Shown here one piece after another: positions 1,523 through 39,156 of a DNA stretch of 64,000 nt (position 1 is the first letter of the stretch; each line of letters begins with the position of its first letter). The notes under the pieces were generated by a model. It saw nothing but the letters and a program-made list of their open reading frames with translations, was not told the origin of the DNA and searched no databases. The position numbers and the translations under genes are program-made. Origin of the DNA: Mizuhopecten yessoensis (Eukaryota); the NCBI RefSeq assembly GCF_002113885.1, contig NW_018408489.1, positions 215,800 through 279,799 on the forward strand, written 5' to 3'.

Positions 1523-4500
1523 TTCATTTCAGAATATTTATTGTTCAGATCTTAGATACAAAGGAATTGGGCAACAGGCAAAGCCTATGAGCGCCCTCTC
1601 CTTACAGTTATAAACAGTTTACACATATCATATTGAATTGAAGTAATGATAAAACATTTATATTATGTACATGAATATTGATATTTGCATGTCATTATTA
1701 ATTTTTTGATAATTGTTGTACAAAAACTAGATTTTACAAAAAAATGGCAATTAAAATGATGCTGGTGGACAGAGCACATAGTAAAAGTATGTACTGGTAT
1801 CATTCCACACAGCAAAGTCATGAGATAAACAAGTAAGTGTAATCTAGTTAAAGCGTCTTGTATCTTTAACGAATCTCTTAACCATCTCCAAGATACTTAT
1901 GTTCATATTGATATCAAGTCTTTGACATCCATAAAGAAAAGTCTGGGTATTTAATGGAATAATGTCATTAAAAGCAGAAATGGAGTTCAGGAGAATTTGC
2001 CTTTGATTAGTATACAGAGTACAATGGAAGAAGAAGTGATCACAGTCCTCAACAGGAGAACTACATAAGCAGGCAGGGGTATCAATTAGGTGAGATTCAA
2101 ATAGATCTGAATTCAGGTTACTGGCACAGTTTCTAAGTTGACATAAGGTAATATTAAATTTTCGATCACCATTGTATTTAAAAATATCAGTACATTGGGG
2201 TTGAGAATCCATTTCATCTGAGTGTAAAAAATCTCTTTTTATAGATCCAATGGATGTCATTGTGGGATACAGGCAAGTTGGATTATTCCATTCAGACATC
2301 AGTTTCGGGAAAAAACTGGCATTATATAACTGAGTTCTTGGTATAGGAACATCAAAAATTCTATTGTGGCGAAGATGATAATTGTCAGTATTATCATTAA
2401 TGTACGGTTGAATTATATCATAGACATGAGAGGGACATTTCCTATTATATATTTTATAAAAAGTAATATTTTGATGCAAATGTCTTCTTCTATTAAGTGT
2501 TATAAAACCAGATTCTCTATATAAGATAGCATGACTTGTTCCACGTCTTAACCCTAAGATAATACGTGCTGCTTCTAGTTGGATAGACTCCAAGACACTG
2601 CATTCATTCTGCGTGCAGTTTGCCCATATAATATTTGCATATTCCAGAATTGGACGTATAAATGTGATATATATAGTTTCGAGTGATTTTCTATCAATTT
2701 TGTATTTCAACATTCTAAGTATATTAATTCTTTTATAAGCTTTTTCGTATATATAGTTTATGTGGTTAGACCAATTAGCCTTGCTGTTGAAAAACAAACC
2801 TAGGTGTTTATGATTAGAAACATTAATAATTGATGATTCATCAAAATATAGGTTAGGATGCAGTGTCTCAGAGTCAACCCGCCTCGAGAAGAGCAGGGCT
2901 ACAGTTTTATCTGGATTAAAGATAATTCCCCATGTTCTAGCCCAGATTGAAATTTTCCTCAGATCATCATTTAATATATTAGCACATTCTTGCCTGTCTC
3001 CCTCAATGAGACCATATAAGGAGGTATCATCAGCAAATAGTTTGAAGTTTGAGGCCAATTCATCACCAATATCATTAATATATAGTAAAAACAAAAAAGG
3101 ACCAAGGACTGAACCTTGGGGTACCCCTGCCTGTAATGTTTTCCAGTTAGACTTATACCCATCTATGACCACTCTCTGTTGCCTATCATGAAGGTATGAT
3201 GTAAACCATTCTAACATATTATTACATATACCATATTTTTTTAGTTTATAAATTAGACCGTCATGCCAAACTCTGTCAAAGGCTTTGCTAATATCACAGA
3301 AAATCATTCTGGCCTCTTTGCCTTTGTCTAAATGTTTTACAATTTCATCGTATATAATTAATAGCTGATACACTGTGGAATCCTTAGGTAAAAAGCCTGA
3401 CTGATTCTTAGAAATAATGTTATATCTTGAGAGGTAATTGAACATATACTTAAAAACATTTTTTTCAAATAGCTTGCTAAATATAGGGGTAACAGATATT
3501 GGTCTATAGTTGGATGGATCACTTTTATCTCCCTTGCCCTTATAAATTGGGGTAACATGAGCATTTTTCCATCTATTTGGTAGCTTTCCGGTAGAAATAG
3601 ATTTGTTGAATAAGAGATAGAGTGGTTTCACAAGAGATTGGGAAACCCCTTTTATGAATTTTGGAGGGATACTATCAGGGCCTGAAGGTTTATTAGTATT
3701 GAGTAGATCGAGCTGATCAAGAATGTCCTGTTCGGTTATGTCTATTGTTGAGAAGCTATGTCGGGGTCGGGGGCAATCAGGAGGTAAATCGTCAGCATTC
3801 TTTTCAGTTACGGAAATCGAAGTGAAATAATCGTTAAAAGATTCCGCCTTATCTATGGGGTGGATTTTCAGTTCGCCGTTGATAATCAATGGAGAGTCAT
3901 TTTCGTTTTTGTTTTTGAGATTCATAACCGATTTTGCAATACGCCACCATTTTCCGGGGGGTATGGTTTTATCAATTAAAGAAGATTGAAGTTTAGATAA
4001 ATATTTTTCTTTAGCTTCCCGGACTAAGGATATAACTTCATTCCGAATAGATCTAAATTTTGCCCAGGAAGATGGAGTATTATGTAGCTTAGCTTTGGAA
4101 TGCTGGCGATTTCTTTGTCTAATTTTGAGTCTGATACCATTAGTCATCCAAATTTTATCATTAGGTCTTATTGTTACTGTTTTATGGGGCACGAATAGGT
4201 CGATAGCAGTTAGGATTTTATCAGTTAAGAGAGAGTTCATATTTTCAATATCACCTTGTAATAAAAGATTCCAGTCAATGGACTTAAGATACTCATTTGC
4301 CCCGTCAAAGTCAGTGTTATTGAAGTATAATAAAGTCTTTTTATATGCATGTTTCTTTAAAGTTTTAAATTTCAGATCAGCGCTTACTGGACAGTGATCA
4401 CTACAAGAGGGAGGATGTACTATTGTATTTTTAATAAAGTTAACATTGTTTGTTAGTATAGTGTCAAGTGATGTTGAGGTCTGGGAAGTAATCCTGGTAG

Positions 4501-5505
4501 GTTCAGTAACAGTGTTTTCTAACCCATATTTCAACAAAATTCTATGTAGATGTGAGTTTGGATTTAGATGTAACATGTCTTGATTTATATCACCTACCAG
4601 GACTACTTCCCTTTGCAGATCAATAATATTATTTAGGTTAATATCTAGCCTGTCCCAGTAGCCAACGAGAGAGTTAGGGGGTCTATATATACAGCCAAGA
4701 AAAATAGGTTTATTATGGGTAGTTACTTCAGTCCATATTAATTCAAGATCATCTGTCTCAAGGTCAGGTCTACGTTTAATATTAATATTATGTTTAGTAT
4801 AAATCAGAACTCCGCCACCATAATTATCTCTATCCTTTCTAAAAATATTACCAAAGTTTTTCAAAGATACAGCACTATCAGGAATTGAATTATCAAGATG
4901 AGTTTCAGAGACGCACAGTATATCGTATTCGGAAAATTCAGCATCAAGAATATGAGTTTTGTTCCTTAACGAACAAATATTGATATGACAAATAGAAATA
5001 AAATCTAGGTGGATGTGGGAGTTGGGTGGACCGGGGTTCGGGTGAATATCACCGCATATGGATAGTATTAATAATAAAATAAAAATGTAGTGCAAATTCA
5101 GAGAGAATAGATTCAGAGAGACACTAACGATACATAAACATTTATAAAGTAGTGAGTCATTCCCTGCCGTTACAGCACCAAGGTAGTTTGTTGTTTTATC
5201 CATTGTCAAAAAGGAAACGAATATGTAGAAAATACATCCTGGTAGAGTAAGAGCAGAGAATGACACAGATAGGTTTTAAGGAAGATACACGGGATATACC
5301 AATATTTAAGTTGTGTAAACAAGATTGACATGCATAACTGTTTATATTCTGAAAACACAATTTGCCTTGGCGAAGTAAACACATTGACAAATGAGAACAA
5401 AAAACAATATAAAAATAGATGATAAACATAAACATTATTTACATTAACCTTTAGGATCCATATAAAAAATGACTGTGATACAAAAATGAAATGTAAGAAA
5501 AAACA
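1523..5505 (-). mobile_element. CR1/L2-group LINE, recent insertion, no ORF1 visible
   Basis: 15-bp TSD gttgttaatattcat at 1508-1522 and 5506-5520; short (tgaaa)n tail; long open ORF2. Confidence 0.85.
1844..5266 (-). CDS. LINE ORF2: 2A-like motif, APE endonuclease, reverse transcriptase, C-terminal Cys/His motif
   Basis: GDIHPNPGP; APE motifs CHINICSL, SETHL, YRPP, GDIN, SDHCPV; RT motifs DISKAFD, GVPQGSVLGP, LFADDT, HLG; CLC..EDCDHFFFHC. The true start codon is uncertain. Confidence 0.95.
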   Translation of the reverse strand: MSFSALTLPGCIFYIFVSFLTMDKTTNYLGAVTAGNDSLLYKCLCIVSVSLNLFSLNLHYIFILLLILSICGDIHPNPGPPNSHIHLDFISICHINICSLRNKTHILDAEFSEYDILCVSETHLDNSIPDSAVSLKNFGNIFRKDRDNYGGGVLIYTKHNINIKRRPDLETDDLELIWTEVTTHNKPIFLGCIYRPPNSLVGYWDRLDINLNNIIDLQREVVLVGDINQDMLHLNPNSHLHRILLKYGLENTVTEPTRITSQTSTSLDTILTNNVNFIKNTIVHPPSCSDHCPVSADLKFKTLKKHAYKKTLLYFNNTDFDGANEYLKSIDWNLLLQGDIENMNSLLTDKILTAIDLFVPHKTVTIRPNDKIWMTNGIRLKIRQRNRQHSKAKLHNTPSSWAKFRSIRNEVISLVREAKEKYLSKLQSSLIDKTIPPGKWWRIAKSVMNLKNKNENDSPLIINGELKIHPIDKAESFNDYFTSISVTEKNADDLPPDCPRPRHSFSTIDITEQDILDQLDLLNTNKPSGPDSIPPKFIKGVSQSLVKPLYLLFNKSISTGKLPNRWKNAHVTPIYKGKGDKSDPSNYRPISVTPIFSKLFEKNVFKYMFNYLSRYNIISKNQSGFLPKDSTVYQLLIIYDEIVKHLDKGKEARMIFCDISKAFDRVWHDGLIYKLKKYGICNNMLEWFTSYLHDRQQRVVIDGYKSNWKTLQAGVPQGSVLGPFLFLLYINDIGDELASNFKLFADDTSLYGLIEGDRQECANILNDDLRKISIWARTWGIIFNPDKTVALLFSRRVDSETLHPNLYFDESSIINVSNHKHLGLFFNSKANWSNHINYIYEKAYKRINILRMLKYKIDRKSLETIYITFIRPILEYANIIWANCTQNECSVLESIQLEAARIILGLRRGTSHAILYRESGFITLNRRRHLHQNITFYKIYNRKCPSHVYDIIQPYINDNTDNYHLRHNRIFDVPIPRTQLYNASFFPKLMSEWNNPTCLYPTMTSIGSIKRDFLHSDEMDSQPQCTDIFKYNGDRKFNITLCQLRNCASNLNSDLFESHLIDTPACLCSSPVEDCDHFFFHCTLYTNQRQILLNSISAFNDIIPLNTQTFLYGCQRLDINMNISILEMVKRFVKDTRRFN

Positions 5506-5821
5506 GTTGTTAATATTCATCTCATAATGAAGAGTAAATGTATTGGTGAAGGTCGCCATCCTATCTTCGCGAAATATCATAAATGTAAAGGTACACGCAA
5601 TGTTAAAAAAAACCAATCTTTAATGGCTTTTGGATATACTGACTTAAAGGGACTAAAGAGAATTTGAAACAGAACGTTTTGAAGATGAAACCACTAGTAG
5701 TTTTGTTTTCTTAACAATCAATGACCTGCTTTACGGATCCTGTTCACATATAAATTGTTGTCTTTGTTTTAACAATATTAATAAATTTTATCTTATTGGC
5801 AATTACCTAAACCATTTTACA

Positions 5822-6010
5822 CAGGTTATCCTACACGGACCCAGTCGACCCACCCCTAATTTGCTGAGCGTTAAGCAGGAGTAGAAACTACCATTTCTAA
5901 AGACTTTGGTATGTCTCGGCCAGGGGACAGAACCCAAAGCCTTCCTCACAGGTGCGAACGCTCAACAAATGGCCAAAAGTGAGGCAATGTCAAGGGAGAC
6001 ATTAGGGGGG
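5822..6010 (-). mobile_element. tRNA-derived SINE fragment
   Basis: gactttggtatgtctcggccaggggacagaaccc..gcgaacgctcaac resembles the reverse complement of a tRNA-like head plus SINE core. Confidence 0.55.
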
Positions 6011-6039
6011 AAAATAAAAAACTGATATATCTTGTAATT

Positions 6040-7090
6040 AAGTGTTTCGCTCTTGACTTTTCTCTGCCTAGTATTCCAAAAACCTTCCGTCTGTAGTACA
6101 AGCATTGCATAAATCTATAGTTCCAGTGTGTGTTCCTTCGTCCTGACCATTTGAGTAGGGAACATATGTTCATACAATCCTGTGTTCTCAGAAACATTCT
6201 TGCGAGACAGAGTGACTGCCATACTAGATGATACATATATATTTATATTTAAAAAAAATGCTCTCAATAAGCTTCAGAGAATGTCTAATGGTCGCCAGAA
6301 GGAGCATAATTATCTTAAATCCATGAGCATAACCCTACCGGATGGCTACATTTTGAACACTGTATGACCATTCAATGGAAGCCAAAATGATGCAAGCATT
6401 ACAAAAACATCATAGACAAGCTCACATGGTTGGAGCAAGACGACAATGTAGTCGTTGGTCGTAGTTTTAGAGATGTCCTGCCAATGTTAGAGGTATCTGG
6501 TATTAATACCAGTATGCACGCATATTTTAAAACTGGTCAGAGTCAACACTCTGATCTACAGGTTAACATTGACAGAGCAGTTACTTACTCCCTATGGATT
6601 GTAGTCTTGTCATTGCTGTATTAAGCATTAGATAGGTTTTTGAACTCAATTATTATCAAATTGCTTCGTTGATATACTTATGGCAGTGCTAAAGATTGTG
6701 ACTGCATGTCTCAATTGGATACGGGGACCAATTTATCAAAGATCACCGGACACTGACAGAAAAGACAGAGAACTCGCACATCAAATGAAGATTCATCTCA
6801 CAGAAACAAACTGTTTGGCTCAGAGGGTGAAAACAACCAGCTCTTTCCAAATGAACAGAGTCAGAATTCGTAAAGATCATACGGGTGAATCAGCACTATC
6901 AAGACCTCATCTGTTGCCAGATTTTTTCCAGACACAAAAGCCAGACTAAATATAATGTCTAGATTCAGTACAGCACGACAACAAATGATAATAATCCAAT
7001 AAAAGATTACTACTGCCAATGCCCAGTTGGTAAAAGAAATATGGGAATGTGTGCGCATACATCAAGTATGCATTATTATATTGGCCATTT
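6040..7090 (+). pseudogene. Decayed PIF/Harbinger/ISL2EU-type (DDE_Tnp_4-like) transposase with C-terminal SWIM finger
   Basis: Fragments AILDDTYIFI, LKSMSITLPDGYI, NDASIT, VVVGRSFRDV, AVTYSLWIV; YYCQCPVGKRNMGMCAH (CxC..CxH) at about 7008-7060; many stops and frameshifts. Confidence 0.65.
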
Positions 7091-28500: not shown

Positions 28501-29566
28501 TACATCAAATTGAAGTAAATTTTAAGAAAAAGAATTGAAAAAAAGTTGTCAGAATAGCAATCGTTCATTTCACCATGGGGTGGTTCATATTACCATAATG
28601 GTAAATATGAACCGCGGTTCATTTCACCATGGCCTTCATATTACCATACTACACCGGTTTTCTTTTTAAATTATTGAATTATTAGCCCTTCAGGTTTGTG
28701 ATAGACCATAGGAGCCTGAAGTTCTGTCAATAATGAATAATAATAGTAATACACAAAAAATACCCCTAATATGCTTAAAAAATAGACAGGAGTGCAACGG
28801 CAGATTTACCCCTCTTCGTTTTCAACGAAGTTTTCTCGCCCAAAACTGAAAAATTCCACAGAAACCAAAACTCCTATGCAGTCTAGGATGACTACTAATG
28901 TACACTACAGATCGTTTTGTGGAACAACATGCTTGCTGACCTGTTACATAGCCCGTTTTTTAGAATTCTCCTTTCAGCGCCCACTGACACGGAATCCATG
29001 CGGTGAATCCGTTTCCGGTCGTACGGAGTGAATATACAGGTAATTATTGTAATATGTTTTCTACTCGAAATTAAATATAAACCAACAATAGTAGGTACTT
29101 TTAACTTTTTTTAAAAATAACTGCACATTCAATTTAATTAACAAATGTACATTAGAGTTGTGTATCATTCTATTTAGAAACATTATTAATCAGGGGCAGA
29201 TAACTCTAATACCCGTTTAGTTCCGTTGCGGGAAATTCAAATTTCAAAGTATCGGGAAGATTTTAAAACATTTCAGAAGCCGTCAACATGAGTGACAAGC
29301 ATCTTGATGTTGCCTTGTGGTATGTTTTTAACTGAAAAGTAGAATTANAAGATCAGACACATGAATAATAAATGCGAGTTAGTTTAATTTGTATGTGAGA
29401 AAATAACAGGCACATGTTTTTTGGAGGGAAATCTGTCAATGCTTTTTGCAGGGAAACTGTCAATGCTTATCAGGCCCATTACACTGCCGATTGAGCTATA
29501 TAGTTGTAAAGACCTATACCATTTGTTTGTTTGTTTGCTTGAGTGGTTTTACGTCCGCTTTACTAC

Positions 29567-29693
29567 CATAGGAGCCTGAAGTTCTGTCAAAAATTAATAA
29601 TAACAGTAATACAAAAATACTATAATATGCTAGGTATTTTTTTCTATTTCTGTTTAATATTATTAATTTTTGAAAGAACTTCAGGCTCCTGTG
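29567..29693. mobile_element. 127-bp MITE sharing the P-like element's termini
   Basis: CATAGGAGCCTGAAGTTCT / AGAACTTCAGGCTCCTGTG; 8-bp TSD TTTACTAC at 29559-29566 and 29694-29701. Confidence 0.9.
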
Positions 29694-30013
29694 TTTACTA
29701 CCTAGTAATTTGGTAAATATAATCAAGCAGACGCCAATACCAGCTCCATCAACCCATCTGAAATAGGGTTTTAGAGCTATTTTGACATGATTTTCGTTCT
29801 AAAAGACAAAAAAAAATCGTTTGCATTTAAAATATCATTTTAACACTACCTGAACTGAAAAAAGCATAAAAATATATGTAATTTTACATTTGTGAAAATA
29901 AATTATACTTTTTACTGTATGCTTTTCGAAGTGAAGTATGAAATCTTTGGAAATATACAGGTAGGTCTTTACAGCTATATACATTGTAGCGCAATACGCA
30001 TAGTGTACTGTAC

Positions 30014-30914
30014 CTGGTTNAGTTGGGCTAGTAATAAGACTTTGAGATGTTCTGGTGTTGTTTCTGATGAAGATATGTTTTCAATAATTTTCACCATGTC
30101 ATTATGATCAGGTTCAGAGAGGTTGATACATGTCATATTGGATTCATCCAAGTCATTCTGTTCATGTCCATTTTTGTTTAAATTATTAGGATCACTTGGA
30201 GTGACTTTTGCCTTTTTATCGGTTTTGGAATCATTCATGTTGTTTTCCATCTTTTTCCGCTTTCTTGATCTACTAATAACTTCATAATTTATGCATCTTT
30301 CACAGTGTTCATTTTTTGCACACAATGGTAAAATCACTCTGCATGACTTTGACCTGTAGATGGTTTTCATGGAGTTTTCATCATGAACATAGCTCCAAGT
30401 TTCCTTTATGACATCACAGGGGCGTTGTTCACTGATGTATGATCCTTGGCACATAGACACAGTTTGGGCAAGTAAAACAAAACCATTAATAGTTTCCTGG
30501 TCAAAATTCAAACGATAGCCCATGCTGAAAACTTTATTACGTATAGTAATTTTTGCAGTTTCTCCTAAAGAAAGAATACAATACTGCAGGCTTCCATTTA
30601 TAATGGTGTTAAAGGGACACTTGACTTCCACAAAGTTATTGTTTGTTTGAGACATTTCACAAAAATCTGGTAAAACCACTTTTTCAACACTTCTTGGACG
30701 CTCCATTATAGATGTGAAAATAATGTGTCGTTTTCCTTTCTCGTACAAAAATGTTGACTTCACATCAAAGATGACTTGAACTAGTCTTGATAGCAGTACT
30801 TGAGTTGGTGGACAGACGTTGTTATCTCTGTAGAATTGCGTACACACATCATACATCCGATTCAGCCGCACAAACTTTTTGCTGTCATCTGTTCGTTGGA
30901 AGTGAATTGCCAAC
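30014..30914 (-). CDS. Exon: RFX-like winged helix plus Cys-rich region, probable N-terminal part of the P-like transposase
   Basis: AG acceptor at 30916-30915; (W)LAIHF..V..MY..NN..P..LV..IF..V..L..G..I pattern; RSKSC..CERC; NLS RSRKRKK; interrupted by an N at 30020; no catalytic domain visible. Confidence 0.55.
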
Positions 30915-31166
30915 CTGTAGAGAAAATAATTTATAATATGTATAATAAATTCAAACAGCATACTTTCGAGTTTCGATGAAGGCCGGAATAATAATTGGTA
31001 AAAAAGTATTCTGTTAATGGCACATTTTGTTTGTTTTATATCACATTTTCTTCTGATAAATGACATATGATATTAAGAGGAATGTATTGTTATATGATAG
31101 AGATCGAATTCAGGAGAAATTCACAAAATTTGGATATCTAATGTTTTGTTTATATTTGTGTTATAG

Positions 31167-34100
31167 GAAGATTTTACAAGAGATTATCCAAAAAGAAGAC
31201 AGCAAAAATGTTGCTGTAACTGCAACAACGGGAATGGCCAGTCTCCATCTAGGATCCAATGCAACAACCTTACACCACTGGGCCGGGATTTTAGATGGGA
31301 GACACTCCATTGAAAAACTTCAAGAGTTATTTGACAATGACGACAGCTACTCAGAAGCCAAAAAACGGATACAGATCACCAAATGCTTAATCATTGATGA
31401 AATAAGCATGTTGTCAGCCAAAATTTTCAACATGGTGGAGTCTGTATGTCGGCTTGTTAAGAAAAATAATCAAGCCTTCGGGGGTATTCAGGTAATTATT
31501 TCTCTAGCAAAAATGAGCCATGACTGGTAATTTGTTTGTCAAAATCATGTCTACAAATATTACCAATATGCATTTTTGTCCCGCCATCATCAAATCTCCC
31601 TCTATGTGTGGTCTGTCTGTCCATTCATACTTAAACAACTATTGTGATGAATTGTTACAATAATACATTATTTTAATACTGTTGACATAACTCCATCCAA
31701 CAGATAAGCGATAATATCAAATTTACATAGTACTAATGATTAATTTACAATGGTGGGCTCAAAGGTCCTTCCTGTATGTTTTATTATCAAATTTGTAAAT
31801 AACCCCTTAATGAAAGCAACTTTTTAATATTTTGTTTCAATATTGTAATTTTTCATTTATAATATTTTTCAGGTTTTAGTGTCTGGGGATTTTAAGCAAC
31901 TTCCTCCTGTTCCAAACTACAGATTAGGGGATGAAGGGAAATACTGTTTCGAAAGTGAGATTTTCCAGCAAACATTTCATCATCATATTAACTTACCCAA
32001 GGTATGTGTAATTTTGTTATACATTTTTACTTCACCAAAGCCCAAGTGAGCTTTTGCAATCTATTGCCATCCATCATCTGTCTGAAACTTTATTTTAACC
32101 ATTTCTCCTCAAAAACTATGAAGCCAACTTCAACCAAATTTTGTAGGAAGTATCAATCTATAAAAATCTTTTCACACATCAGCTATCTGAGGATTCTTGA
32201 ATTTGTTATATAGCATATACATGTACTACAAAACTGAAAACTTGCAAAGAAAACCCCCCAAAAAGGTCTTATTGGAAACAAATGACCTTGAACCATATTT
32301 TAAGGTCATGGGGTCATATCTTGTGAAATACTCAAACAAAAATGCCTAGTCATTATATTTCGCATTTTGGCAATATTATATATGGCAAATAGCTTGGTTT
32401 GATATAGTGCTATATTTCTTCTTCTTTTTTAAGAAATAAGCCTTGAACCATATTCAATGCCACAGTATTCCATTTTATTGATACACCCAACAACCTCTTC
32501 TGAGAGCAGCTAAGGACATTAATTGATTAGTTTATGAGTGGAAGGTAGCCAGGTTGCATGGCAGGCCGCTTCTCTTAAATTAATACATGGAAAATGATCC
32601 CTGTAATGCATGTTATAGTGACGAAGCATGCAAGTATGTACATGTATTTACAAGGTAAATGTTAAAGCTAATGGCTTCTTAGCTTGCATAGATGATTTTG
32701 TAATTCCTTTGTTCATTTGTTCACAGGTAATGAGACAACATGAGGAAGACTTAATCAAAGCTGTAAATGAGTTATGTAACGGTTCTCCATCAGCTGAAAC
32801 ACTGCAGCTGATGAAAAGTCTTGACAGACCCCTGGACCCTGGTGATGATCATACAGAAATTGTGAGCTTTTTGGAACAAACTTTGATGCCAGCTTTGTGA
32901 ACCAAGAAATGTTGGAGGATATGGAAGGAGAAATGCATGTGTTCAAAGCCAAAGATGAAGGTTTGTACTTAATTACCAGTACCTTCCTGGGGTGAAGTTT
33001 CTCAAATTATTGATCTTCAAATATCAAATAATAGTTTGAAGTGGATAACCATGTGAAAAGTTTTGAACATTTTGTAAAACATCTATAAAGGTCTAAAGTA
33101 TTTAAATGTGTTTTTTAGCAACAATAGTAAGCTGGAATATAGTGATTATTGAAAAAAATAAAGACAAAGGGCTAATTTGAACATCCTTAGCCTATTTGTT
33201 TTTACCTCCAGTTATATGTGTTCAGGTGACAGATACAGGTCCCCTGGGTCTCTTGTTTAAGTTTTGTTGATTTCATTTTTTCCTGATCATTTTATATTCA
33301 TGTATATATATGTATTCTTTCAGGTTATCTGAAGCTTTTACGAGGAAATGCGGTTCCTAAAACACTGACTGTAAAGATATGTGCTCCAGTCATTCTTTTG
33401 AAAAATATTGGAAACGGTCTATTCAATGGAATGAGAGGAAAAGTCCACAGTATATCGAAGGAAAATCTACCTATTATTGATTTCCATGGACGAATGATCA
33501 CAGTGAGTCCTGTAAGATTTGATGTTTTTGATGCACAACAGCAAAAATCGTTGGCGTCGCGAAGACAAATTCCACTCATGCTGGCATTTGCGTTGACAGT
33601 TCATAGAGCCCAAGGTCAGACAATAGAAAAACTTGAAATTGACTGTTATTCTTTTTTTGCACCGGGACAGATGGGTGTTGCTGTTGGCAGAGCTAGAAAC
33701 AAAACTGGGTTGTGTATCAGGAACTTTAACAAAAAAGCAGCCAACCTCAAACATCCTCAGTGTGTTTATGACTTTTACGATAATGTAGAACAATTCCAAA
33801 ACCGCGTAGATGACTGTTGTTGGGCTGATATTGTGTGTGAGGATCTATTACCTCTGGACACTGAACCCAGCTCGTCACAGACCTATGAGACTGATCCAGA
33901 GGAACCAGGTCCATCTGAGTTACCTGCAGAAGCAACACCAAAATCAACAGTTGAATCCCCATTTAGCCTGGAAGAGTTTTTCCTTCACAACAAAGATGCT
34001 AAATTCACGTACAATATTCAATCAGATGTAATCAAGAAATTAAAAGGTCACATGAACTGGATTTATGAAATAATTACTGACATCTTAAAAGAAAGTCCAA

Positions 34101-35212
34101 AAACAAGACAGAAGTGGACCACAGCTTTCGATCAACTGAACAATTTCTTAGTGAGTGACAACCACATCACCAGCATCAAAACACTCTTTTCTGTGGACAC
34201 AATTACAAAAGAAAACAACAAGCTCTCTTCCAAACTGGCTTTCTGGCTCATGGACAAACTAATTGAAAATGAGGCCAAAAAAGTGCAACAAACACAGGAA
34301 GAGGAACTGCATCAGGAGACCCCACCTCCTCAACTTTCACAAGCTGCCAAAGGAAAAATTAGATATATTGCTGGTGCATGTGTTAACAAAATTGGGACAA
34401 GGCTGCAAAAGTCGGTTGTATCAAAACTAAGTCAATGCACAGCCAAGAGCAAAATAAGTAGGAAATTGGACTACAGGAAACAACGAATGCTGAAAACCTT
34501 CAGAATAAATGAGAGTGAAGTTGACGATTCAGAACCCAGCATGGCAGAGATAGATTTCAAACAAGGGTTGTCACATGGATTATATGTTGTCAGTGATGAT
34601 GTGTTTAATTTCTTCATTAAACTCCATGATGTGGTGCAAAGCACAATAACCGTGGCTCAATTTCATCTGCATTTTGACAACATTCACCTGAATTGTAGGT
34701 CTGCAGTTGATGCCAGTGACCTTCTTCTCGACAAATGGATAGATTTGTTTGGGGAAATCGATGACACACAAATGGAAGATGAAATATTCTTGAATTTAGT
34801 TATGGAGCTGTACAAAGACATTACAGAATATTTCTTGAAAGTGTCCATAGCAGAGGCCTTGAAAAACTTTAAAGCAACTGTGCCAAGGAAGAAAAAACAA
34901 GCGTTTAGGGTCAAACTCACTGCTCTTGGCGAGAAAAAAAATCCCAAAAAACAAAAACTTGAGGAAATAAATACAGAACAGGCATCATACATTTGTCATT
35001 TATGTAATGAAATTTGTGACTGGGATCCGGCAGAGATTGGGGATGAGAGCATTGCCTGTGACACGTGCAATTGCTGGTGTCACTATAAATGTGTTGACAT
35101 TGAAGGAACTGAAACTTTCTTGAAAAGAAAAAATGCTAAGTGGTATTGTCCAAACTGCTTTAAGGGGAAAGGCAAGGGAAAAGGCAGGGGGAAAAAAAGT
35201 AAAAAGAATTAA
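31167..35212 (+). CDS. Spliced Pif1-family helicase + P-transposase-CTD-like domain + PHD finger (exons 31167-31491, 31873-32001, 32727-32960, 33324-35212); one frameshift near 32865; Walker A exon not found
   Basis: Helicase motifs TATTGMAS, LIIDEISML, FGGIQV, GDFKQLPPV, VMRQ, AFALTVHRAQGQT, VAVGRAR; RYIAGAC and GLYVVSDDVFNFF; PHD CHLC..IACDTCNCWCHYKC..WYCPNC; canonical GT-AG introns. Confidence 0.9.
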
Positions 35213-35857
35213 GTGTAAGAAATACATGTCATTTATATTTCTTTGTTTTTTTTGTAAACTCATAGATTCTACTGTGTCCAGTTTAGGTCAAAGGTTGAAT
35301 GAAAATCACAGTTATGGGCTAAACAAGAATGGGGGTCCATGCATGATTGAATATAAATTTGTATTAAGATTTTGTATTGATGCGACATTGGTTGTAGTTG
35401 AGTATTGGCTCTACATATATGTCTTTTCTGGGTTTTTTTTGTTACAAATACACCAGTCATAAAAGGATCACAAATGATATTTTATGCTTGATGAGATTAT
35501 CAGGTTGTTCAACTGCCTAACATAACTATAAACTATGTCAGATTTGGTTGAATATGTATCTACCACATATAACCCCTTCCTGTCTTTATTTTAATATATT
35601 CTGTAAAATATAGTGTACTCTTTCTTTTTGATTTTTTTTTCACTGAGCAGTGGGCACTGTAACTCCATAGGAGTCAAATATAATGTTTATAATATTAACA
35701 AGAGTAACAAATAGAAATATCAGAAATGTAAAGTACTCCAGTCACAGAACTGATCTGCTAAATAAATTATTGACTGAAAAACGCTATGTTTTCTCGTTTT
35801 TTTTAAAAACTGTTTCCCATTTCATGGTCTAATTCTACTTTTCAGTTAAAAACATAC

Positions 35858-35889
35858 CACAAGGCAACATCAAGATGCTTGTCACTCAT
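35858..35889 (-). CDS. Putative first coding exon MSDKHLDVAL(W) inside the right TIR (mirror copy at 29288-29319 on +)
   Basis: caacATG context; GTATGT donor; phase 2 matches the 30914 acceptor and creates the W of the RFX-like WL motif. Confidence 0.55.
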
Positions 35890-36600
35890 GTTGACGGCTT
35901 CTGAAATGTTTTAAAATCTTCCCGATACTTTGAAATTTGAATTTCCCGCAACGGAACTAAACGGGTATTAGAGTTATCTGCCCCTGATTAATAATGTTTC
36001 TAAATAGAATGATACACAACTCTAATGTACATTTGTTAATTAAATTGAATGTGCAGTTATTTTTAAAAAAAGTTAAAAGTACCTACTATTGTTGGTTTAT
36101 ATTTAATTTCGAGTAGAAAACATATTACAATAATTACCTGTATATTCACTCCGTACGACCGGAAACGGATTCACCGCATGGATTCCGTGTCAGTGGGCGC
36201 TGAAAGGAGAATTCTAAAAAACGGGCTATGTAACAGGTCAGCAAGCATGTTGTTCCACAAAACGATCTGTAGTGTACATTAGTAGTCATCCTAGACTGCA
36301 TAGGAGTTTTGGTTTCTGTGGAATTTTTCAGTTATGGGCGAGAAAACTTCGTTGAAAACGAAGAGGGGTAAATCTGCCGTTGCACTCCTGTCTATTTTTT
36401 AAGCATATTAGGGGTATTTTTTTTGTATTACTATTATTATTCATTATTGACAGAACTTCAGGCTCCTATGGATAGACGTAAGAAGGAGAATTTATATTGC
36501 TTGGTGATTGTTTAAAAAGTGTAGTTTGGTATACGACTAAAAAGGGTTTAACAATTGTGGTTTTACAATTAGTCAGGTATATATAGACACTTTTGGTGAA

Positions 36601-38012
36601 CATGGAGACTAATAAATACTCCAGTGAGTCGGATATTACTAAATCTGTTTGGGAGGAAGAGTTTGTAGAGACTGTAGTACAAACACCTTCAGATAGATTT
36701 ACATCAACACCAAAGAGGGCTCCAGAAAATGATTTAGAGCCATTTATCCTCAGTCAAGATATCATATCGTTTCCTAAGCGTAAAGGTGTGGGTAGTAGGG
36801 AGGTAGTTACCTTAGAATCGCCACCCAGCTCAGAAACAGAGGAAGATGAAAATACAGAGGATGAAATAAAAAGGGTGGTAGTAAGAAGAAGGTTAAGACA
36901 GTCTGCTGTACATTTTACCCCTAAAACTATGAAAGTTAAGACAGGAAAAAGGGGAGGATGTTAAACCCGCGATTAAACAGAAAGTTTATAGTACTGAGAG
37001 GGAAAGGTCAGAACAGTATGAGGGGGATACTGAGGATAATGAACCACATTTGGTTAGACATAAAAATAGGAGACAGGTCAGACGTAAGGTGTCGGGGGCA
37101 GCACCTGCCTCACACACCATCCCACAAATTTCAAGTATCAATGATAGCCACAGGGAGTTAGATGGACAGATTACTGACACTCCTCAGAGCATAAACGTTC
37201 TATCTAATCAAAATTTGTCAGGATTGAGGGTGCATAGAAGAGAAAAACATCCAGATACATTTAACGGTACTAGCAGTGACTGGCAAGACTATCTTGTTCA
37301 CTTTAAACAGGTAGCTGCCTGGAATGCTTGGACGGACACAGAAAAATCCCAACAATTAAGTATGAGTTTAAGGGACACAGCCCAAAAGCTGTTAAGCAAT
37401 CTAACGGTAGGGCAGTTATCTGATTATAACTCAATTAGACAATGTCTCACTTAGAGATTCAATTCTAAGGAAATGAGTGTGGCACATAGGTGTACAATGA
37501 GGGAACAAAAGCAGAGTAAAGGCGAGTCAGCTCCAGACTTTGGGTATTCTCTACGAAGAACATCATTACTAGCTTACCCAGGTTTACCCTGTCATTACCT
37601 AGAGTGTCAAGTAACAGATCAGTTCATAAACGGTCTAAATAACTTTGAGATGAAAAAGAAGGTAGCATTTAGCCATCCTTAAACACCAGAAGAGGCTATT
37701 TCCTCCGCTGTAGAGTACGAGGCTGTAGCAGGGAGTAGTCCACAGAAACACGTGGAAACCTCTGAAAAAGTCTGTTCCATAACCCAATCTGATAGCTAAG
37801 GGAGTCAGATATTAACAATAGAGCAAATAAGTAAGCTACTGGACAACAAGTTAGCGGAACCTAGAAAAGGAAGGAAAGATAGTAAAAACAGGACTTCAGA
37901 CAAAAAGGGGGCTTGTTTGTTTTTTAAAGAAGAGGATCATTATATGAGGGAATGTACCAGACTTAATAATTTAAGGGACTTAGAAGAAAAACTAAGTAGG
38001 TCAGAAAACTAA
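36601..38012 (+). pseudogene. Gypsy gag, disrupted
   Basis: PDTFNGTSSDWQDYLVHFKQVAAWNAW..LSMSLRDTAQ; QSKGES..DFGYSLRR..LAYP; DQFINGL; decayed zinc knuckle near 37910-37955; frameshift and stops. Confidence 0.8.
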
Positions 38013-38149
38013 AGAAGGCTAGGGTTGTGGCCGAGATACCAGTCTATCAGGATACAATACACACAATATGTATATCTAGGCCTAAAACAGAGTTAAACAA
38101 AGGGGAGAAAACCCAGTTTCGACTAAGTTCACATAATGTATCTTCAGGC

Positions 38150-38500
38150 ATAGGTTATCTGTATACAGATGTGCAGGTGCACAATGTAACGTGTAGGATG
38201 CTGGTAGATACTGGGTCTCCTGTTTCTGTTCTCTCCTATAGGGAGTTTGTAAAATTGGGATTAGACCAACAGTCGCTACAGGGATTTGGACCAAATCTCA
38301 TAACAGCAAATGGAAACCAACTTGATGTTAAGGGATATATTCCTTAAGTTTTTGAAATGGGACCATATAAGTTTGAACAAACCTTTGTAGTGTCAGCTGT
38401 AGATAACCTATCAGGTTTACTAGGGATTGATTTCTTAGTGAAATATGAGAGTGAAATTCAGCTTCAAAACGAAATCTTAGTAACCTCTCAGAAAAAAGTT
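38150..38500 (+). pseudogene. Gypsy aspartic protease
   Basis: MLVDTGSPVSVLS, ITANGNQL, GLLGIDFL; one stop; no RT, RNase H or integrase follows. Confidence 0.8.
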
Positions 38501-38919
38501 CAGTTAAGCAGAAAGATACATAACAGTCAGTGTTAAGGTAATACTCTCTGTTATTGACATAGCACCATCAGGAGGTGTTTGTACAGATCCAGATGCGGTA
38601 ATTAGTACTGTGGATACGGTAACTAATGTTGAGAGTTTGAAATACACAGAGTTAGGTGAGCATCCTGAAAATAAACTCCCAAACAACTTTAAAATTCAAA
38701 TAGACTATAGTCAAAGTTTTGAGGGAGAACATGACTTGAAGGATGTCTCGTTATTGGAAAAAAATTCACGTGAGGATACTAGCCTAATTACGATAAAACA
38801 CCACCATGCTACGCTCATCCAACTAATGATAGTCATGCTTTTGACAGGACTGATAGCGATGACTATAATTGGTACCGTTATGTCTGATCCGTTACGCTAC
38901 AAAATACTAGTAGATGTGC

Positions 38920-39156
38920 TTGTGTTCGACACTGATGTTGATACTAGATAGGAAGGGACATTGTCAGACAGATAGAGTAGCTATAGGTAGACCCAGGGTT
39001 TGGTATCCTCCGTAACTATACAGGTGGTACGGGTATGTTTGTGTTCGACACTGATGTTGATACTAGATAGGAAGGGACATTGTCAGACAGATAGAGTATC
39101 TAAAGGTAGACCCAGGGTTTGGTATCCTCAGTAACTATACAGGTGGTACGGGTATG
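38920..39156. repeat. Tandem duplication of about 119 bp
   Basis: ttgtgttcgacactgatgttgatactagatagg..caggtggtacgggtatg occurs twice. Confidence 0.85.

What the first reader, a model, noticed from the sequence alone, without database searches (positions are those of the whole stretch)
34330..35212. Helicase fused to a P-transposase C-terminal-like domain, a PHD finger and a basic tail
Seen: after helicase motif VI the same ORF reads KIRYIAGACVNKI...GLYVVSDDVFNFF, then a complete C4HC3 PHD finger and GKGKGKGRGKKSKKN. From recalled family patterns, the first two motifs resemble the YIAGY / GGLxxPS signature of the P/THAP9 transposase C-terminal domain. Inference: the helicase is a native part of the element rather than cargo, and may dock on the transposase and read histone H3 tails.
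Basis: partly seen in the sequence, partly recalled or inferred. Interest (0 to 1): 0.8.

Follow-up and report, generated by a model that had tools for sequence, protein, structure and literature searches.

The report
Transposon helicase carrying P-transposase tail domain
Inside a young P-type jumping gene of the Yesso scallop, the last exon of a Pif1 helicase gene also encodes a copy of the tail domain that P-element transposases normally carry themselves, followed by a chromatin-reading PHD finger, while the element's own transposase has no such tail, which suggests a two-protein transposition machine not described before.

Summary
ORF 33398-35212 (+) reads through Pif1 helicase motifs V and VI, a linker, a ~330-aa all-helical region, a C4HC3 PHD finger (Pfam 1.9e-6) and a GK-rich tail.

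The second half of the helical region (residues ~311-515, window 34328-34942) is a homologue of the P/THAP9 transposase C-terminal domain (CTD).
- An AlphaFold model has the Drosophila P transposase CTD (6p5a_B, 617-734) as its single best match among 48,161 chains: Z 10.9, 118/118 residues, next Z 7.5.
- The three nearest ESM-Atlas clusters are THAP9_C or P-transposase clusters.
- All three published CTD consensus blocks are present in order.
- Pfam HMMs and Foldseek do not detect the domain.

The helicase belongs to a P-like element (28707-36470) with 642-nt perfect TIRs and a 7-bp TSD. In a sister copy, and in ark clam, sea cucumber and a metagenome contig, the P-like transposase lies on the opposite strand inside helicase intron 1 and ends without a CTD. 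RNA contigs show the spliced mRNA.

A second P-like clade (mollusc, starfish, amphioxus, hydroid) encodes the CTD homologue as a stand-alone second ORF.

Docking in trans and histone reading are inferred, not tested.

The parts
28700..28706 (.). Left copy of the 7-bp target-site duplication, GATAGAC.
   Evidence: Read directly. The same heptamer follows the right end at 36471-36477.
28707..29347 (+). Left terminal inverted repeat, terminus CATAGGAGCC. The outer ~339 nt are shared with the sister copy. The inner ~300 nt are a mirror of the right end and sit where the sister copy has helicase exon 1.
   Evidence: 642-nt arms, 100% complementary; blastn map to L006; the termini are repeated across the genome, many as ~150-bp MITE-like pairs.
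29566..29693 (.). Nested MITE-like unit of 128 bp with the same CATAGGAGCC termini.
   Evidence: pairs I2-I4.
29975..31066 (-). N-terminal part of the P-like transposase gene (363-aa ORF, no Pfam match). It breaks off at a single N (30020), exactly where the sister copy continues with 1.5 kb that encodes the RNase H core.
   Evidence: In sister copy L006, the ORF at 2166-3485(-) matches PF21787 TNP-like_RNaseH_N at 7e-16. The N was not filled.
31167..31491 (+). Helicase exon 2 (Pif1 motifs Ia-II; PF05970, 5e-15).
   Evidence: GT..AG joints in RNA contigs laid on L006 were mapped to the window. Coordinates are good to about +/-2 nt.
31873..32001 (+). Helicase exon 3.
32727..32960 (+). Helicase exon 4. 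In the assembly the reading frame changes near 32850-32864. RNA contigs of four runs carry one more letter there.
   Evidence: two frames. table 4: place 6417 of L006..
33324..33800 (+). Start of the last exon: Pif1 2B/2A end of the helicase, with motif V at 33581-33622 and motif VI at 33665-33712.
   Evidence: 5o6b Pif1, E 2.4e-16, residues 18-131; acceptor site..
33965..34327 (+). Helical sub-domain of unknown relationship (ORF residues ~190-310), conserved within the helicase family only.
   Evidence: There is no specific structural match. It is not similar to the N-half of the stand-alone ORF2 family (hhalign E 0.68).
34328..34942 (+). P/THAP9-transposase CTD-like domain (ORF residues ~311-515). 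Region 1 (YIAG) is at 34355-34405, region 2 (GL..VSD..FNFF.KL) at 34574-34636, region 3 (LYKDITEYFLKV) at 34781-34843, and the terminal basic helix (VPRKKKQAFRVKL) at 34880-34939.
   Evidence: 6p5a_B, Z 10.9. THAP9_C clusters; hhalign E 3e-8 and 4.4e-8 to the ORF2 family; published consensus blocks; coordinates.
34988..35158 (+). C4HC3 PHD finger.
   Evidence: PF00628, 1.9e-6, above the cut-off; the nearest solved relatives are DIDO1, PPS, ING2, TAF3, BYE1, PHF2 and SPP1, and the Trp two residues before the His aligns.
35165..35209 (+). Gly/Lys-rich basic tail (GKGKGKGRGKKSKKN), conserved as a GKGKGK run in relatives.
35830..36470 (-). Right terminal inverted repeat, followed by the TSD copy GATAGAC at 36471-36477.

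Best explanation
The stretch is the 3' half of the last exon of the accessory gene of a P-superfamily cut-and-paste transposon of Mizuhopecten yessoensis. The gene encodes four modules in order:
- a Pif1-family 5'-3' helicase;
- a helical linker domain;
- a homologue of the all-helical C-terminal domain (CTD) of P-element/THAP9 transposases;
- a PHD finger and a Gly/Lys-rich basic tail.

The element's own transposase is encoded on the opposite strand inside helicase intron 1. It stops about 55-70 residues after the last RNase H motif and has no CTD.

**Proposed mechanism.** The CTD-like domain occupies, in trans, the place the CTD takes in the Drosophila transpososome. That place is between the RNase H domain of one subunit and the insertion domain of the other, along the single-stranded transposon end, with its terminal basic helix pointing at the target DNA. 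This would build the helicase into the transpososome next to the single-stranded end. It would also put the PHD finger and basic tail next to the target, where they could bias insertion towards H3K4-methylated chromatin.

**Shown:** the domain architecture, homology of the domain to the CTD, membership of the gene in the element, absence of a CTD from the cognate transposases, and expression with splicing.

**Inferred:** docking in trans, what the helicase does, and histone reading.

The copy in the window is itself defective. It lacks exon 1 (Walker A), lacks the transposase core or has it hidden by an N, and has a frame change in exon 4. Its last exon is intact.

The confidence given is for the whole statement including the docking mechanism. 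For homology of the domain to the CTD, and for the helicase being native to the element, it is about 0.9 each.
For: **Homology to the CTD**
- The model of residues 190-513 (pLDDT 79.6) has 6p5a_B, the P transposase CTD 617-734, as its only match with Z>=8 among 48,161 chains. Z is 10.9, rmsd 2.7 A, 118/118 aligned, 17% identity, and the next match has Z 7.5.
- The ESM-Atlas top three rows are THAP9_C or P-transposase clusters. The best aligns 168 residues at TM 0.59, over query residues 117-313.
- The published CTD consensus blocks are ALEYIAGYVARKL..SRGGLIKPSDAFLNFLKKLENIF.. and ..LLKDIIICFLKIRA... They correspond to KIRYIAGACVNKI, SHGLYVVSDDVFNFFIKLHDVV and LYKDITEYFLKV in the ORF.
- hhalign to the stand-alone ORF2 family of other P-like elements gives probability 95% and E 3e-8. 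For the C-halves alone E is 4.4e-8, and the cross-controls give 0.02-0.7.
- The ORF2 family model also has 6p5a_B as rank 1 (Z 9.8, 115/118 aligned, 23% identity). Three ORF2 members touch PF12596 weakly (best E 0.04).

**Native part of a P-like element**
- The window element has 642-nt perfect TIRs and a 7-bp TSD.
- Sister copy L006 has a PF21787 transposase at 7e-16.
- The same layout recurs in three other sources: Walker-A exon, then the transposase on the opposite strand, then the rest of the helicase.
  - Tegillarca L036, inside ~350-nt TIRs with an 8-bp TSD.
  - Holothuria L037.
  - Metagenome contig L038.
- All 10 of 10 distant long relatives tested carry Pif1-family domains, and 9 of the 10 show a PHD match (E<=0.01).

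**Transposases lack a CTD**
- The transposases of L006 and L036 end about 65-70 residues after VENLFGQQRG.
- All 52 relatives of the second clade with a recognisable motif end 55-70 residues after it, and none has a YIAGY-like motif.
- None of the 120 best relatives carries PF12596.

**Expression**
- RNA contigs from four studies show GT..AG joints: 977->4842 (one run), 5161->5543, and 5674->6277 (four runs).

**Plausibility of action in trans**
- In the solved complex the CTD hangs on a flexible, disordered linker and sits against another subunit.
- It contacts the looped-out single strand and the target DNA, and it ends in a basic helix (review PMC7776569).
- The helicase domain likewise ends in a conserved basic helix, VPRKKKQALR.K.
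Against: - No sequence HMM sees the relationship. PF12596 and PF22824 do not appear even at E<=10 for any of 12 members. Profiles against the PDB return only PHD matches or nothing. Foldseek against the PDB returns nothing better than E 0.3.
- A Z near 10 is within the range that helical bundles can reach by arrangement alone, according to the tool's own note.
- The models rest on shallow alignments of 11 and 7 sequences. pLDDT is 58-92 across the CTD-like part, and the mean for ORF2 is 68.
- A 2026 preprint reports that CTD-less THAP9 and Drosophila transposase still excise and integrate in cell assays. A missing CTD therefore need not be complemented, and the domain could be regulatory instead.
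- The insertion (GTP-binding) domain of this element's transposase is not recognised by Pfam.
- The window copy cannot make a full helicase.
Confidence: 0.6

Rival explanations
1. The domain is a true CTD homologue but does not complete the transposase. It acts as a regulator or competitor. For example, it could limit integration or titrate transposon ends, in the way truncated P proteins repress transposition. Alternatively it is simply the helicase's own DNA-binding module for the element's single-stranded ends.
For: - CTD truncation of THAP9 favours integration, and the CTD is dispensable for catalysis in cell assays (preprint).
- The CTD contacts single-stranded transposon DNA and target DNA directly.
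- The stand-alone ORF2 family shows that the domain is maintained as a separate product in many phyla.
Against: - In the solved complex the CTD is wedged between protein domains of two subunits, not only on DNA.
- The strict co-inheritance with CTD-less transposases, seen in two different gene layouts, is what a required subunit would show.
- Neither point excludes a regulatory role.
Confidence: 0.25
2. The resemblance to the P transposase CTD is a generic helical-bundle arrangement plus chance short motifs. The region is an unrelated helicase accessory domain.
For: - Pfam, HMM-versus-PDB and Foldseek searches are all negative.
- Z values of 9.8-10.9 are below the ~13 that unrelated helical models sometimes reach (notes).
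Against: - The same 118-residue chain is rank 1 of 48,161 for two models built from different families. It is fully covered and stands about 3 Z units above the next row.
- A third library gives THAP9_C or P-transposase clusters as its top three.
- Three ordered motif blocks match the published consensus.
- The gene sits in P-like elements whose transposases lack exactly this domain.
Confidence: 0.06
3. The helicase is a host Pif1 paralogue, or captured cargo, that happens to lie between the inverted repeats of this copy.
For: - Pif1-like genes are often multiplied in invertebrate genomes.
- Only 2-3 near-identical copies exist in this genome.
Against: - The nested layout with the transposase in helicase intron 1 is conserved in scallop, ark clam, sea cucumber and a metagenome contig, with transposases only 35-40% identical.
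- In Tegillarca both genes lie inside the TIRs, with an 8-bp TSD.
- Every one of the four family members whose flanking DNA could be checked has a P-like transposase beside it.
Confidence: 0.03

Closest known systems
C-terminal domain of Drosophila P element transposase and human THAP9 (PDB 6P5A residues 617-734; Pfam PF12596 Tnp_P_element_C, PF22824 THAP9_C)
   Same: - All-helical fold that superposes at Z 10.9 with 118/118 residues aligned.
- Three conserved blocks in the same order: YIAG.., ..GL..[PV]SD..F.NF..KL.., ..L.KDI...FLK[IV]..
- A terminal basic helix.
- Association with a P-type RNase H transposase and with 7-8-bp target duplications.
   Different: - Here the domain is not part of the transposase. 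It lies in a Pif1 helicase, between a helical linker domain and a PHD finger, and the transposase ends without it.
- It is about 70 residues longer through insertions between blocks 1 and 2.
- The Pfam models do not detect it.
- The literature held here states that this fold occurs only in DmTNP and THAP9 homologues.
RAG1/RAG2 and the ProtoRAG transposon (transposase plus accessory subunit with a PHD finger that reads H3K4me3)
   Same: - A DDE-type cut-and-paste enzyme paired with a second element-encoded protein that carries a PHD finger of the H3K4me3-reader type.
- Both genes lie between the inverted repeats.
   Different: - RAG2 has a kelch propeller, not a helicase or a CTD.
- The transposase superfamily differs (Transib versus P).
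- PHD function is untested here.
DNA transposons that encode helicases: Helitron Rep-Hel (Pif1-like) and KolobokH (RecQ)
   Same: - An SF1B or SF2 helicase encoded by the element itself.
- KolobokH and Kolobok-1_CCri show that DDE transposons can carry a helicase, sometimes on the complementary strand.
   Different: - In Helitrons the helicase is fused to a HUH nuclease and the mechanism is rolling-circle. The solved Pif1 proteins match this ORF far better than Helraiser does (2.4e-16 versus 2.9e-5).
- Kolobok uses RecQ and TTAA targets.
- Neither carries a piece of the transposase on the helicase.
Two-protein DNA transposons (PIF/Harbinger transposase plus Myb-like ORF2; Kolobok0 plus KolX)
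   Same: - The element needs, or at least keeps, a second conserved ORF beside the transposase.
- The stand-alone ORF2 family found here in other P-like elements has this simple form.
   Different: The second protein here is homologous to a domain that other members of the same superfamily have inside the transposase, so the case looks like a split or fusion of one machine. No two-ORF P-superfamily element was found in the papers searched.

Membership tests
P/THAP9 transposase C-terminal domain (PF12596 / PF22824) | All-alpha fold superposable on the solved CTD (6P5A 617-734). | tested here: met
   - rank 1 of 48,161 chains, Z 10.9, rmsd 2.7 A, 118/118 aligned.
- the Atlas top three are THAP9_C or P-transposase clusters.
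- Foldseek against the PDB was negative.
P/THAP9 transposase C-terminal domain (PF12596 / PF22824) | Three conserved helical blocks with the published consensus (YIAGY; RGGLxxPSDxF; hydrophobic or charged block 3). | tested here: met
   The consensus strings come and the family alignments. Invariant residues are Y134, A136, G137, G205, L206, V209, F214, F216 and F217. Block 3 reads L.KDITE.F.[KR][IV]. Departures from consensus: the fifth residue of block 1 is A or V rather than Y, and V replaces P in block 2.
P/THAP9 transposase C-terminal domain (PF12596 / PF22824) | Match to the Pfam HMM above the gathering score. | tested here: not met
   - Neither family is listed at E<=10 for 12 members.
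- Neither is found in six frames of the genome.
- Only the stand-alone ORF2 relatives touch PF12596, at E 0.04-0.27.
P/THAP9 transposase C-terminal domain (PF12596 / PF22824) | Located at the C-terminus of a P-type transposase, after the RNase H domain. | tested here: not met
   It follows a Pif1 helicase. The cognate transposase ends without it. It is therefore a homologous domain in a new context, not a member of the transposase family.
Pif1 family helicase (PF05970, SF1B) | Helicase motifs I-VI including the Walker A motif. | tested here: inconclusive
   - Motifs Ia-VI are present in window exons 2-5.
- The Walker A exon (GQCGTGKT) is present in sister copy L006 at 881-977 and in L036, L037 and L038.
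- That exon is absent from the window copy.
- The gene family is a member. This copy is 5'-truncated.
PHD finger (PF00628) | C4HC3 zinc ligands with correct spacing, and an HMM match above the cut-off. | tested here: met
   One search gives 28.2 bits against a cut-off of 24. Ten of 12 relatives match. The ligands can be read directly in the alignment.
PHD finger (PF00628) | Binding of the histone H3 tail (aromatic cage for K4me3). | not testable with these tools
   - The nearest solved relatives are H3K4me3 readers, and the Trp at His-2 aligns.
- The first cage position is not canonical. It reads Y/F/D two residues before the first Cys.
- This needs a peptide-binding assay.
P superfamily DNA transposon | Terminal inverted repeats and a 7-8-bp target-site duplication. 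| tested here: met
   - Window: 642-nt TIRs and the TSD GATAGAC.
- Tegillarca relative: 8-bp TSD ATATAAAC.
P superfamily DNA transposon | Transposase with a TNP-like split RNase H domain. | tested here: met
   - PF21787 at 7e-16 in sister copy L006, and also in L036 and L038.
- In the window copy this part is missing at a single N.
P superfamily DNA transposon | GTP-binding insertion domain (PF21788) inside the RNase H domain. | tested here: inconclusive
   Pfam does not detect it in the L006 transposase, although about 230 residues separate the two RNase H parts. It is detected in the second clade (L007, 1e-20).

The most novel reading that the evidence does not exclude
Across several animal phyla there is a clade of P-type transposons whose transpososome is heteromeric. 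The transposase lacks the C-terminal domain, and that domain is supplied by a second element-encoded protein. The second protein is either a small stand-alone ORF2 or, in the lineage found here, a Pif1 helicase with a PHD finger. The CTD module then serves as the plug that brings an ATP-driven helicase to the single-stranded transposon ends and a histone reader to the target site. This would be a P-element counterpart of RAG1/RAG2.
Probability: 0.45. Interest if true: 0.85.

Novelty: new variant of a known kind. Interest (0 to 1): 0.8.

Why it matters
**An open question about the CTD.** The function of the P/THAP9 transposase C-terminal domain is unresolved. The papers held here call it functionally uncharacterised and say its fold occurs in no other protein.

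**What this finding adds.** The domain has been separated from the transposase and kept on a partner protein, in two different forms and in several phyla. That argues for a self-contained module that works in trans. It also gives a direct experimental handle: co-express or omit the partner, and swap or delete the module.

**Possible consequences.**
- It would add a two-component family to the P superfamily, with a built-in Pif1 helicase and a chromatin reader.
- It bears on how P elements create and handle their unusual 17-nt single-stranded ends.
- It bears on why P elements favour promoters.
- It bears on how accessory subunits such as RAG2 become attached to transposases.
- Young copies with perfect repeats, expressed mRNA and abundant MITEs suggest recent activity in a farmed scallop.

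Tried and rejected
- **Pfam scan** of the ORF and of 12 family members at E<=10: only PHD hits, no PF12596 or PF22824.
- **HMM profiles against PDB sequences.** A1 gave only PHD chains, A2 gave nothing, and A4 and the single ORF2 gave only chance hits.
- **Foldseek against the PDB:** no match better than E 0.3.
- **ESM-Atlas search by sequence features:** no usable hit.
- **Six-frame search of the scallop genome** with PF12596 and PF22824: nothing. The controls did not ring either, so this is weak evidence of absence.
- **Word search with the 348-aa minus-strand ORF** (transposase N-terminal part): no relatives.
- **Looking for a CTD elsewhere.** I looked for a YIAGY-type motif in every ORF of at least 90 aa in L006 and L036, and in the C-terminal tails of the second-clade relatives. 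I found none outside the helicase or ORF2.
- **Similarity of the first helical sub-domain (residues 190-310) to the N-half of ORF2:** none (hhalign E 0.68).
- **Helitron origin:** considered and rejected. There is no Rep domain, the element has TIRs and a TSD, and cellular-type Pif1 structures match far better than Helraiser.
- **KolobokP:** considered and rejected. That lineage has direct long terminal repeats, TTAA targets and a His-Me nuclease.

- The exons were not joined into one spliced protein for any search.
- The N at 30020 was not filled from other copies.
Full report
**What is there.** The window comes from the Yesso scallop, Mizuhopecten yessoensis. An annotated protein of that species is 100% identical to part of the ORF.

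ORF 33398-35212 (+, 604 aa) is open throughout. It contains, in order (coordinates):
- Pif1 motif V at 33581-33622 and motif VI at 33665-33712. Solved Pif1 structures match at E 2.4e-16.
- An acidic linker.
- A conserved helical region of about 330 aa.
- A C4HC3 PHD finger at 34988-35158 (PF00628, E 1.9e-6, above the cut-off).
- A Gly/Lys-rich tail at 35165-35209.

These features are not chance. Eleven relatives at 43-50% identity keep these residues invariant. An HMM of the region finds 720 clusters. All ten distant long hits that I scanned carry Pif1-family domains, and nine of them also show a PHD match.

**Is the middle region related to the P transposase C-terminal domain?** Sequence HMMs say nothing:
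- Neither PF12596 nor PF22824 appears at E<=10 for any member.
- Profiles against PDB sequences find only PHD chains or nothing.
- Foldseek against the PDB is empty.

Structure and profile-profile comparison say yes:
- An AlphaFold2 model built without templates (pLDDT 79.6) was aligned to 48,161 representative chains. The best match is 6p5a_B, residues 617-734 of the Drosophila P element transposase, which is its CTD. Z is 10.9, rmsd 2.7 A, all 118 residues are aligned, identity is 17%, and the model range is 122-309. The next chain has Z 7.5.
- The ESM-Atlas shape search gives, as its first three rows, a THAP9_C cluster (168 residues aligned, TM 0.59), a P-transposase RNaseH_C plus THAP9_C cluster, and a full-length THAP-RNaseH-GBD cluster. 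All three map to model residues ~110-320.
- A 2026 preprint gives consensus strings for the three conserved helical blocks of the CTD. All three are recognisable in the ORF, in the same order, including block 3 (L.KDI...FLK[IV]).

The tool warns that helical models can reach such Z values by arrangement alone. The case therefore rests on the convergence of independent lines, not on Z by itself.

**A second family links the two.** While looking for P-like transposases in the same genome, I found elements such as L007, whose transposase has PF21787, PF21788 and PF21789. These elements carry a separate, convergent ORF of about 350 aa with YISGY and RGGLKFPSD motifs.
- The pair recurs at four scallop loci.
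- It also occurs in abalone, a starfish, amphioxus and a hydroid. In amphioxus the pair lies inside 36-nt TIRs with a 7-bp TSD.
- The alignment of this ORF2 family matches the helicase region at hhalign probability 95% and E 3e-8 over 152 columns.
- The signal lies only in the C-terminal halves (E 4.4e-8). The N-halves give E 0.68 and the cross-controls give 0.02-0.07.
- The ORF2 model also has 6p5a_B as rank 1 (Z 9.8, 115/118 aligned, 23% identity, next Z 7.2).
- Three ORF2 members touch PF12596 weakly.

Two models from two families thus pick the same 118-residue chain out of 48,161.

**The element.**
- Arms 28706-29347 and 35830-36471 are 642 nt long and 100% complementary.
- The termini read CATAGGAGCC, and the heptamer GATAGAC flanks both ends.
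- The termini are repeated through the genome, mostly as short MITE-like pairs. One such pair is nested at 29566-29693.

A 99%-identical sister copy (L006) shows the full layout.
- Helicase exon 1 lies just inside the left repeat. It has an ATG, the Walker A motif GQCGTGKT and a GTAAGT donor.
- About 3.9 kb follow, holding the transposase gene on the opposite strand (PF21787, 7e-16).
- Then come helicase exons 2-5.

RNA contigs of four runs from four studies carry GT..AG joints at 977->4842 (one run, 29 letters on the short side), 5161->5543, and 5674->6277 (all four runs). They also show the junction into the last exon. The gene is therefore expressed and spliced, and the transposase lies in its first intron.

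The same order recurs in three other sources:
- Tegillarca granosa, inside ~350-nt TIRs with an 8-bp TSD.
- Holothuria leucospilota.
- A metagenome contig.

The transposases in these sources are only 35-40% identical to the scallop one. The helicase is therefore a native, long-standing part of the element.

**The transposases lack the domain.**
- The transposases of L006 and Tegillarca end about 65-70 residues after the VENLFGQQRG motif, in a conserved ..RRSIRI tail.
- In the second clade, all 52 relatives with a recognisable motif end 55-70 residues after it, and none has a YIAGY-like motif.
- None of the 120 best relatives carries PF12596.
- No other ORF in L006 or L036 has the motif.

**How it most likely works (inference).** According to the review of the cryo-EM structure, the CTD:
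- hangs on a flexible, disordered linker;
- runs along the looped-out single strand of the transposon end;

A domain with those properties can plausibly be supplied by another polypeptide. On the helicase it ends in a conserved basic helix (VPRKKKQALR.K..), followed directly by the PHD finger and a basic tail.

I therefore propose that the domain plugs the helicase into the transpososome. The Pif1 motor would sit at the single-stranded end; P elements make 17-nt 3' extensions. The PHD and tail would sit at the target. The PHD's nearest solved relatives are H3K4me3 readers, and the cage Trp aligns. This would fit the known promoter preference of P elements.

Against a strict requirement, a preprint reports that CTD-less THAP9 and Drosophila transposase still excise and integrate, and that truncation favours integration. 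A regulatory role is therefore a serious rival.

**State of this copy.** Relative to the sister copy, the window copy differs in four ways:
- It lacks the 143 bp that hold exon 1. Those are replaced by an inward extension of the left repeat.
- It lacks the 1.5 kb that encode the transposase core. The junction is a single N at 30020, so a gap cannot be excluded, and I did not fill it.
- Exon 4 changes frame where RNA contigs have one more letter.
- Its last exon is intact, whereas the sister copy has an in-frame stop there.

**Limits.**
- No canonical CTD sequence was available from a tool, so there is no direct sequence alignment with one.
- The exons were searched separately and never joined.
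- The models rest on shallow alignments.
- The library of papers holds nothing on Pif1 with P/THAP9 elements. Repbase reports are not covered, so prior description there cannot be excluded.

Noticed in passing
L006:881-4842 (sister copy G000:C5180); window 29975-31166: The P-like transposase gene lies on the opposite strand inside the first intron of the helicase gene. Helicase exon 1 (Walker A) sits just inside the left inverted repeat. An RNA contig joins 977 to 4842 with GT..AG ends. The same nesting occurs in Tegillarca, Holothuria and a metagenome contig.
   Followed up: partly
L007:455-1543 (+) with 3711-6890 (-); L031:11542-12660; L032:13886-14938; L033:13007-14092; L035:11429-12388: A second clade of P-like elements has a CTD-less transposase and a convergent, unannotated ORF2 of about 350 aa that is a stand-alone homologue of the P transposase CTD. 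It occurs in scallop, abalone, starfish, amphioxus and a hydroid. In amphioxus it lies inside 36-nt TIRs with a 7-bp TSD.
   Followed up: partly
window 30020: A single N lies exactly where the window copy lacks 1.5 kb (the transposase RNase H core) relative to the sister copy. This is either a deletion or an assembly gap. It was not filled.
   Followed up: partly
window 29044-29347: The inner ~300 nt of the left inverted repeat mirror the right end and replace the segment that holds helicase exon 1 in the sister copy, whose left repeat is only ~339 nt. This could come from template switching during repair or from an assembly collapse.
   Followed up: no
window 29566-29693 and many genome places: There are ~130-150-bp MITE-like units with the same CATAGGAGCC termini. 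One is nested inside this element, and dozens are scattered across the genome at 95-100% identity to the first ~80 nt of the repeat.
   Followed up: no
window 32850-32864 (L006 place 6417): Both assembled copies differ from the RNA contigs of four runs by one letter in helicase exon 4, where the assembled reading frame changes.
   Followed up: no
window 29975-31066 (-): The N-terminal 350 aa of the transposase have no Pfam match and no word-search relatives. No THAP domain was detected. Another note of the scan calls this region RFX-like, which was not tested here.
   Followed up: no
window 36593-38951 (+): Directly right of the element are ORFs with a retroviral-type aspartyl protease (PF13650/PF13975, ~5e-6) that look like part of an LTR retrotransposon. 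They are probably the insertion target or a neighbour.
   Followed up: no
window 1844-5266 (-): This is the largest ORF of the window (1140 aa). It was not examined.
   Followed up: no
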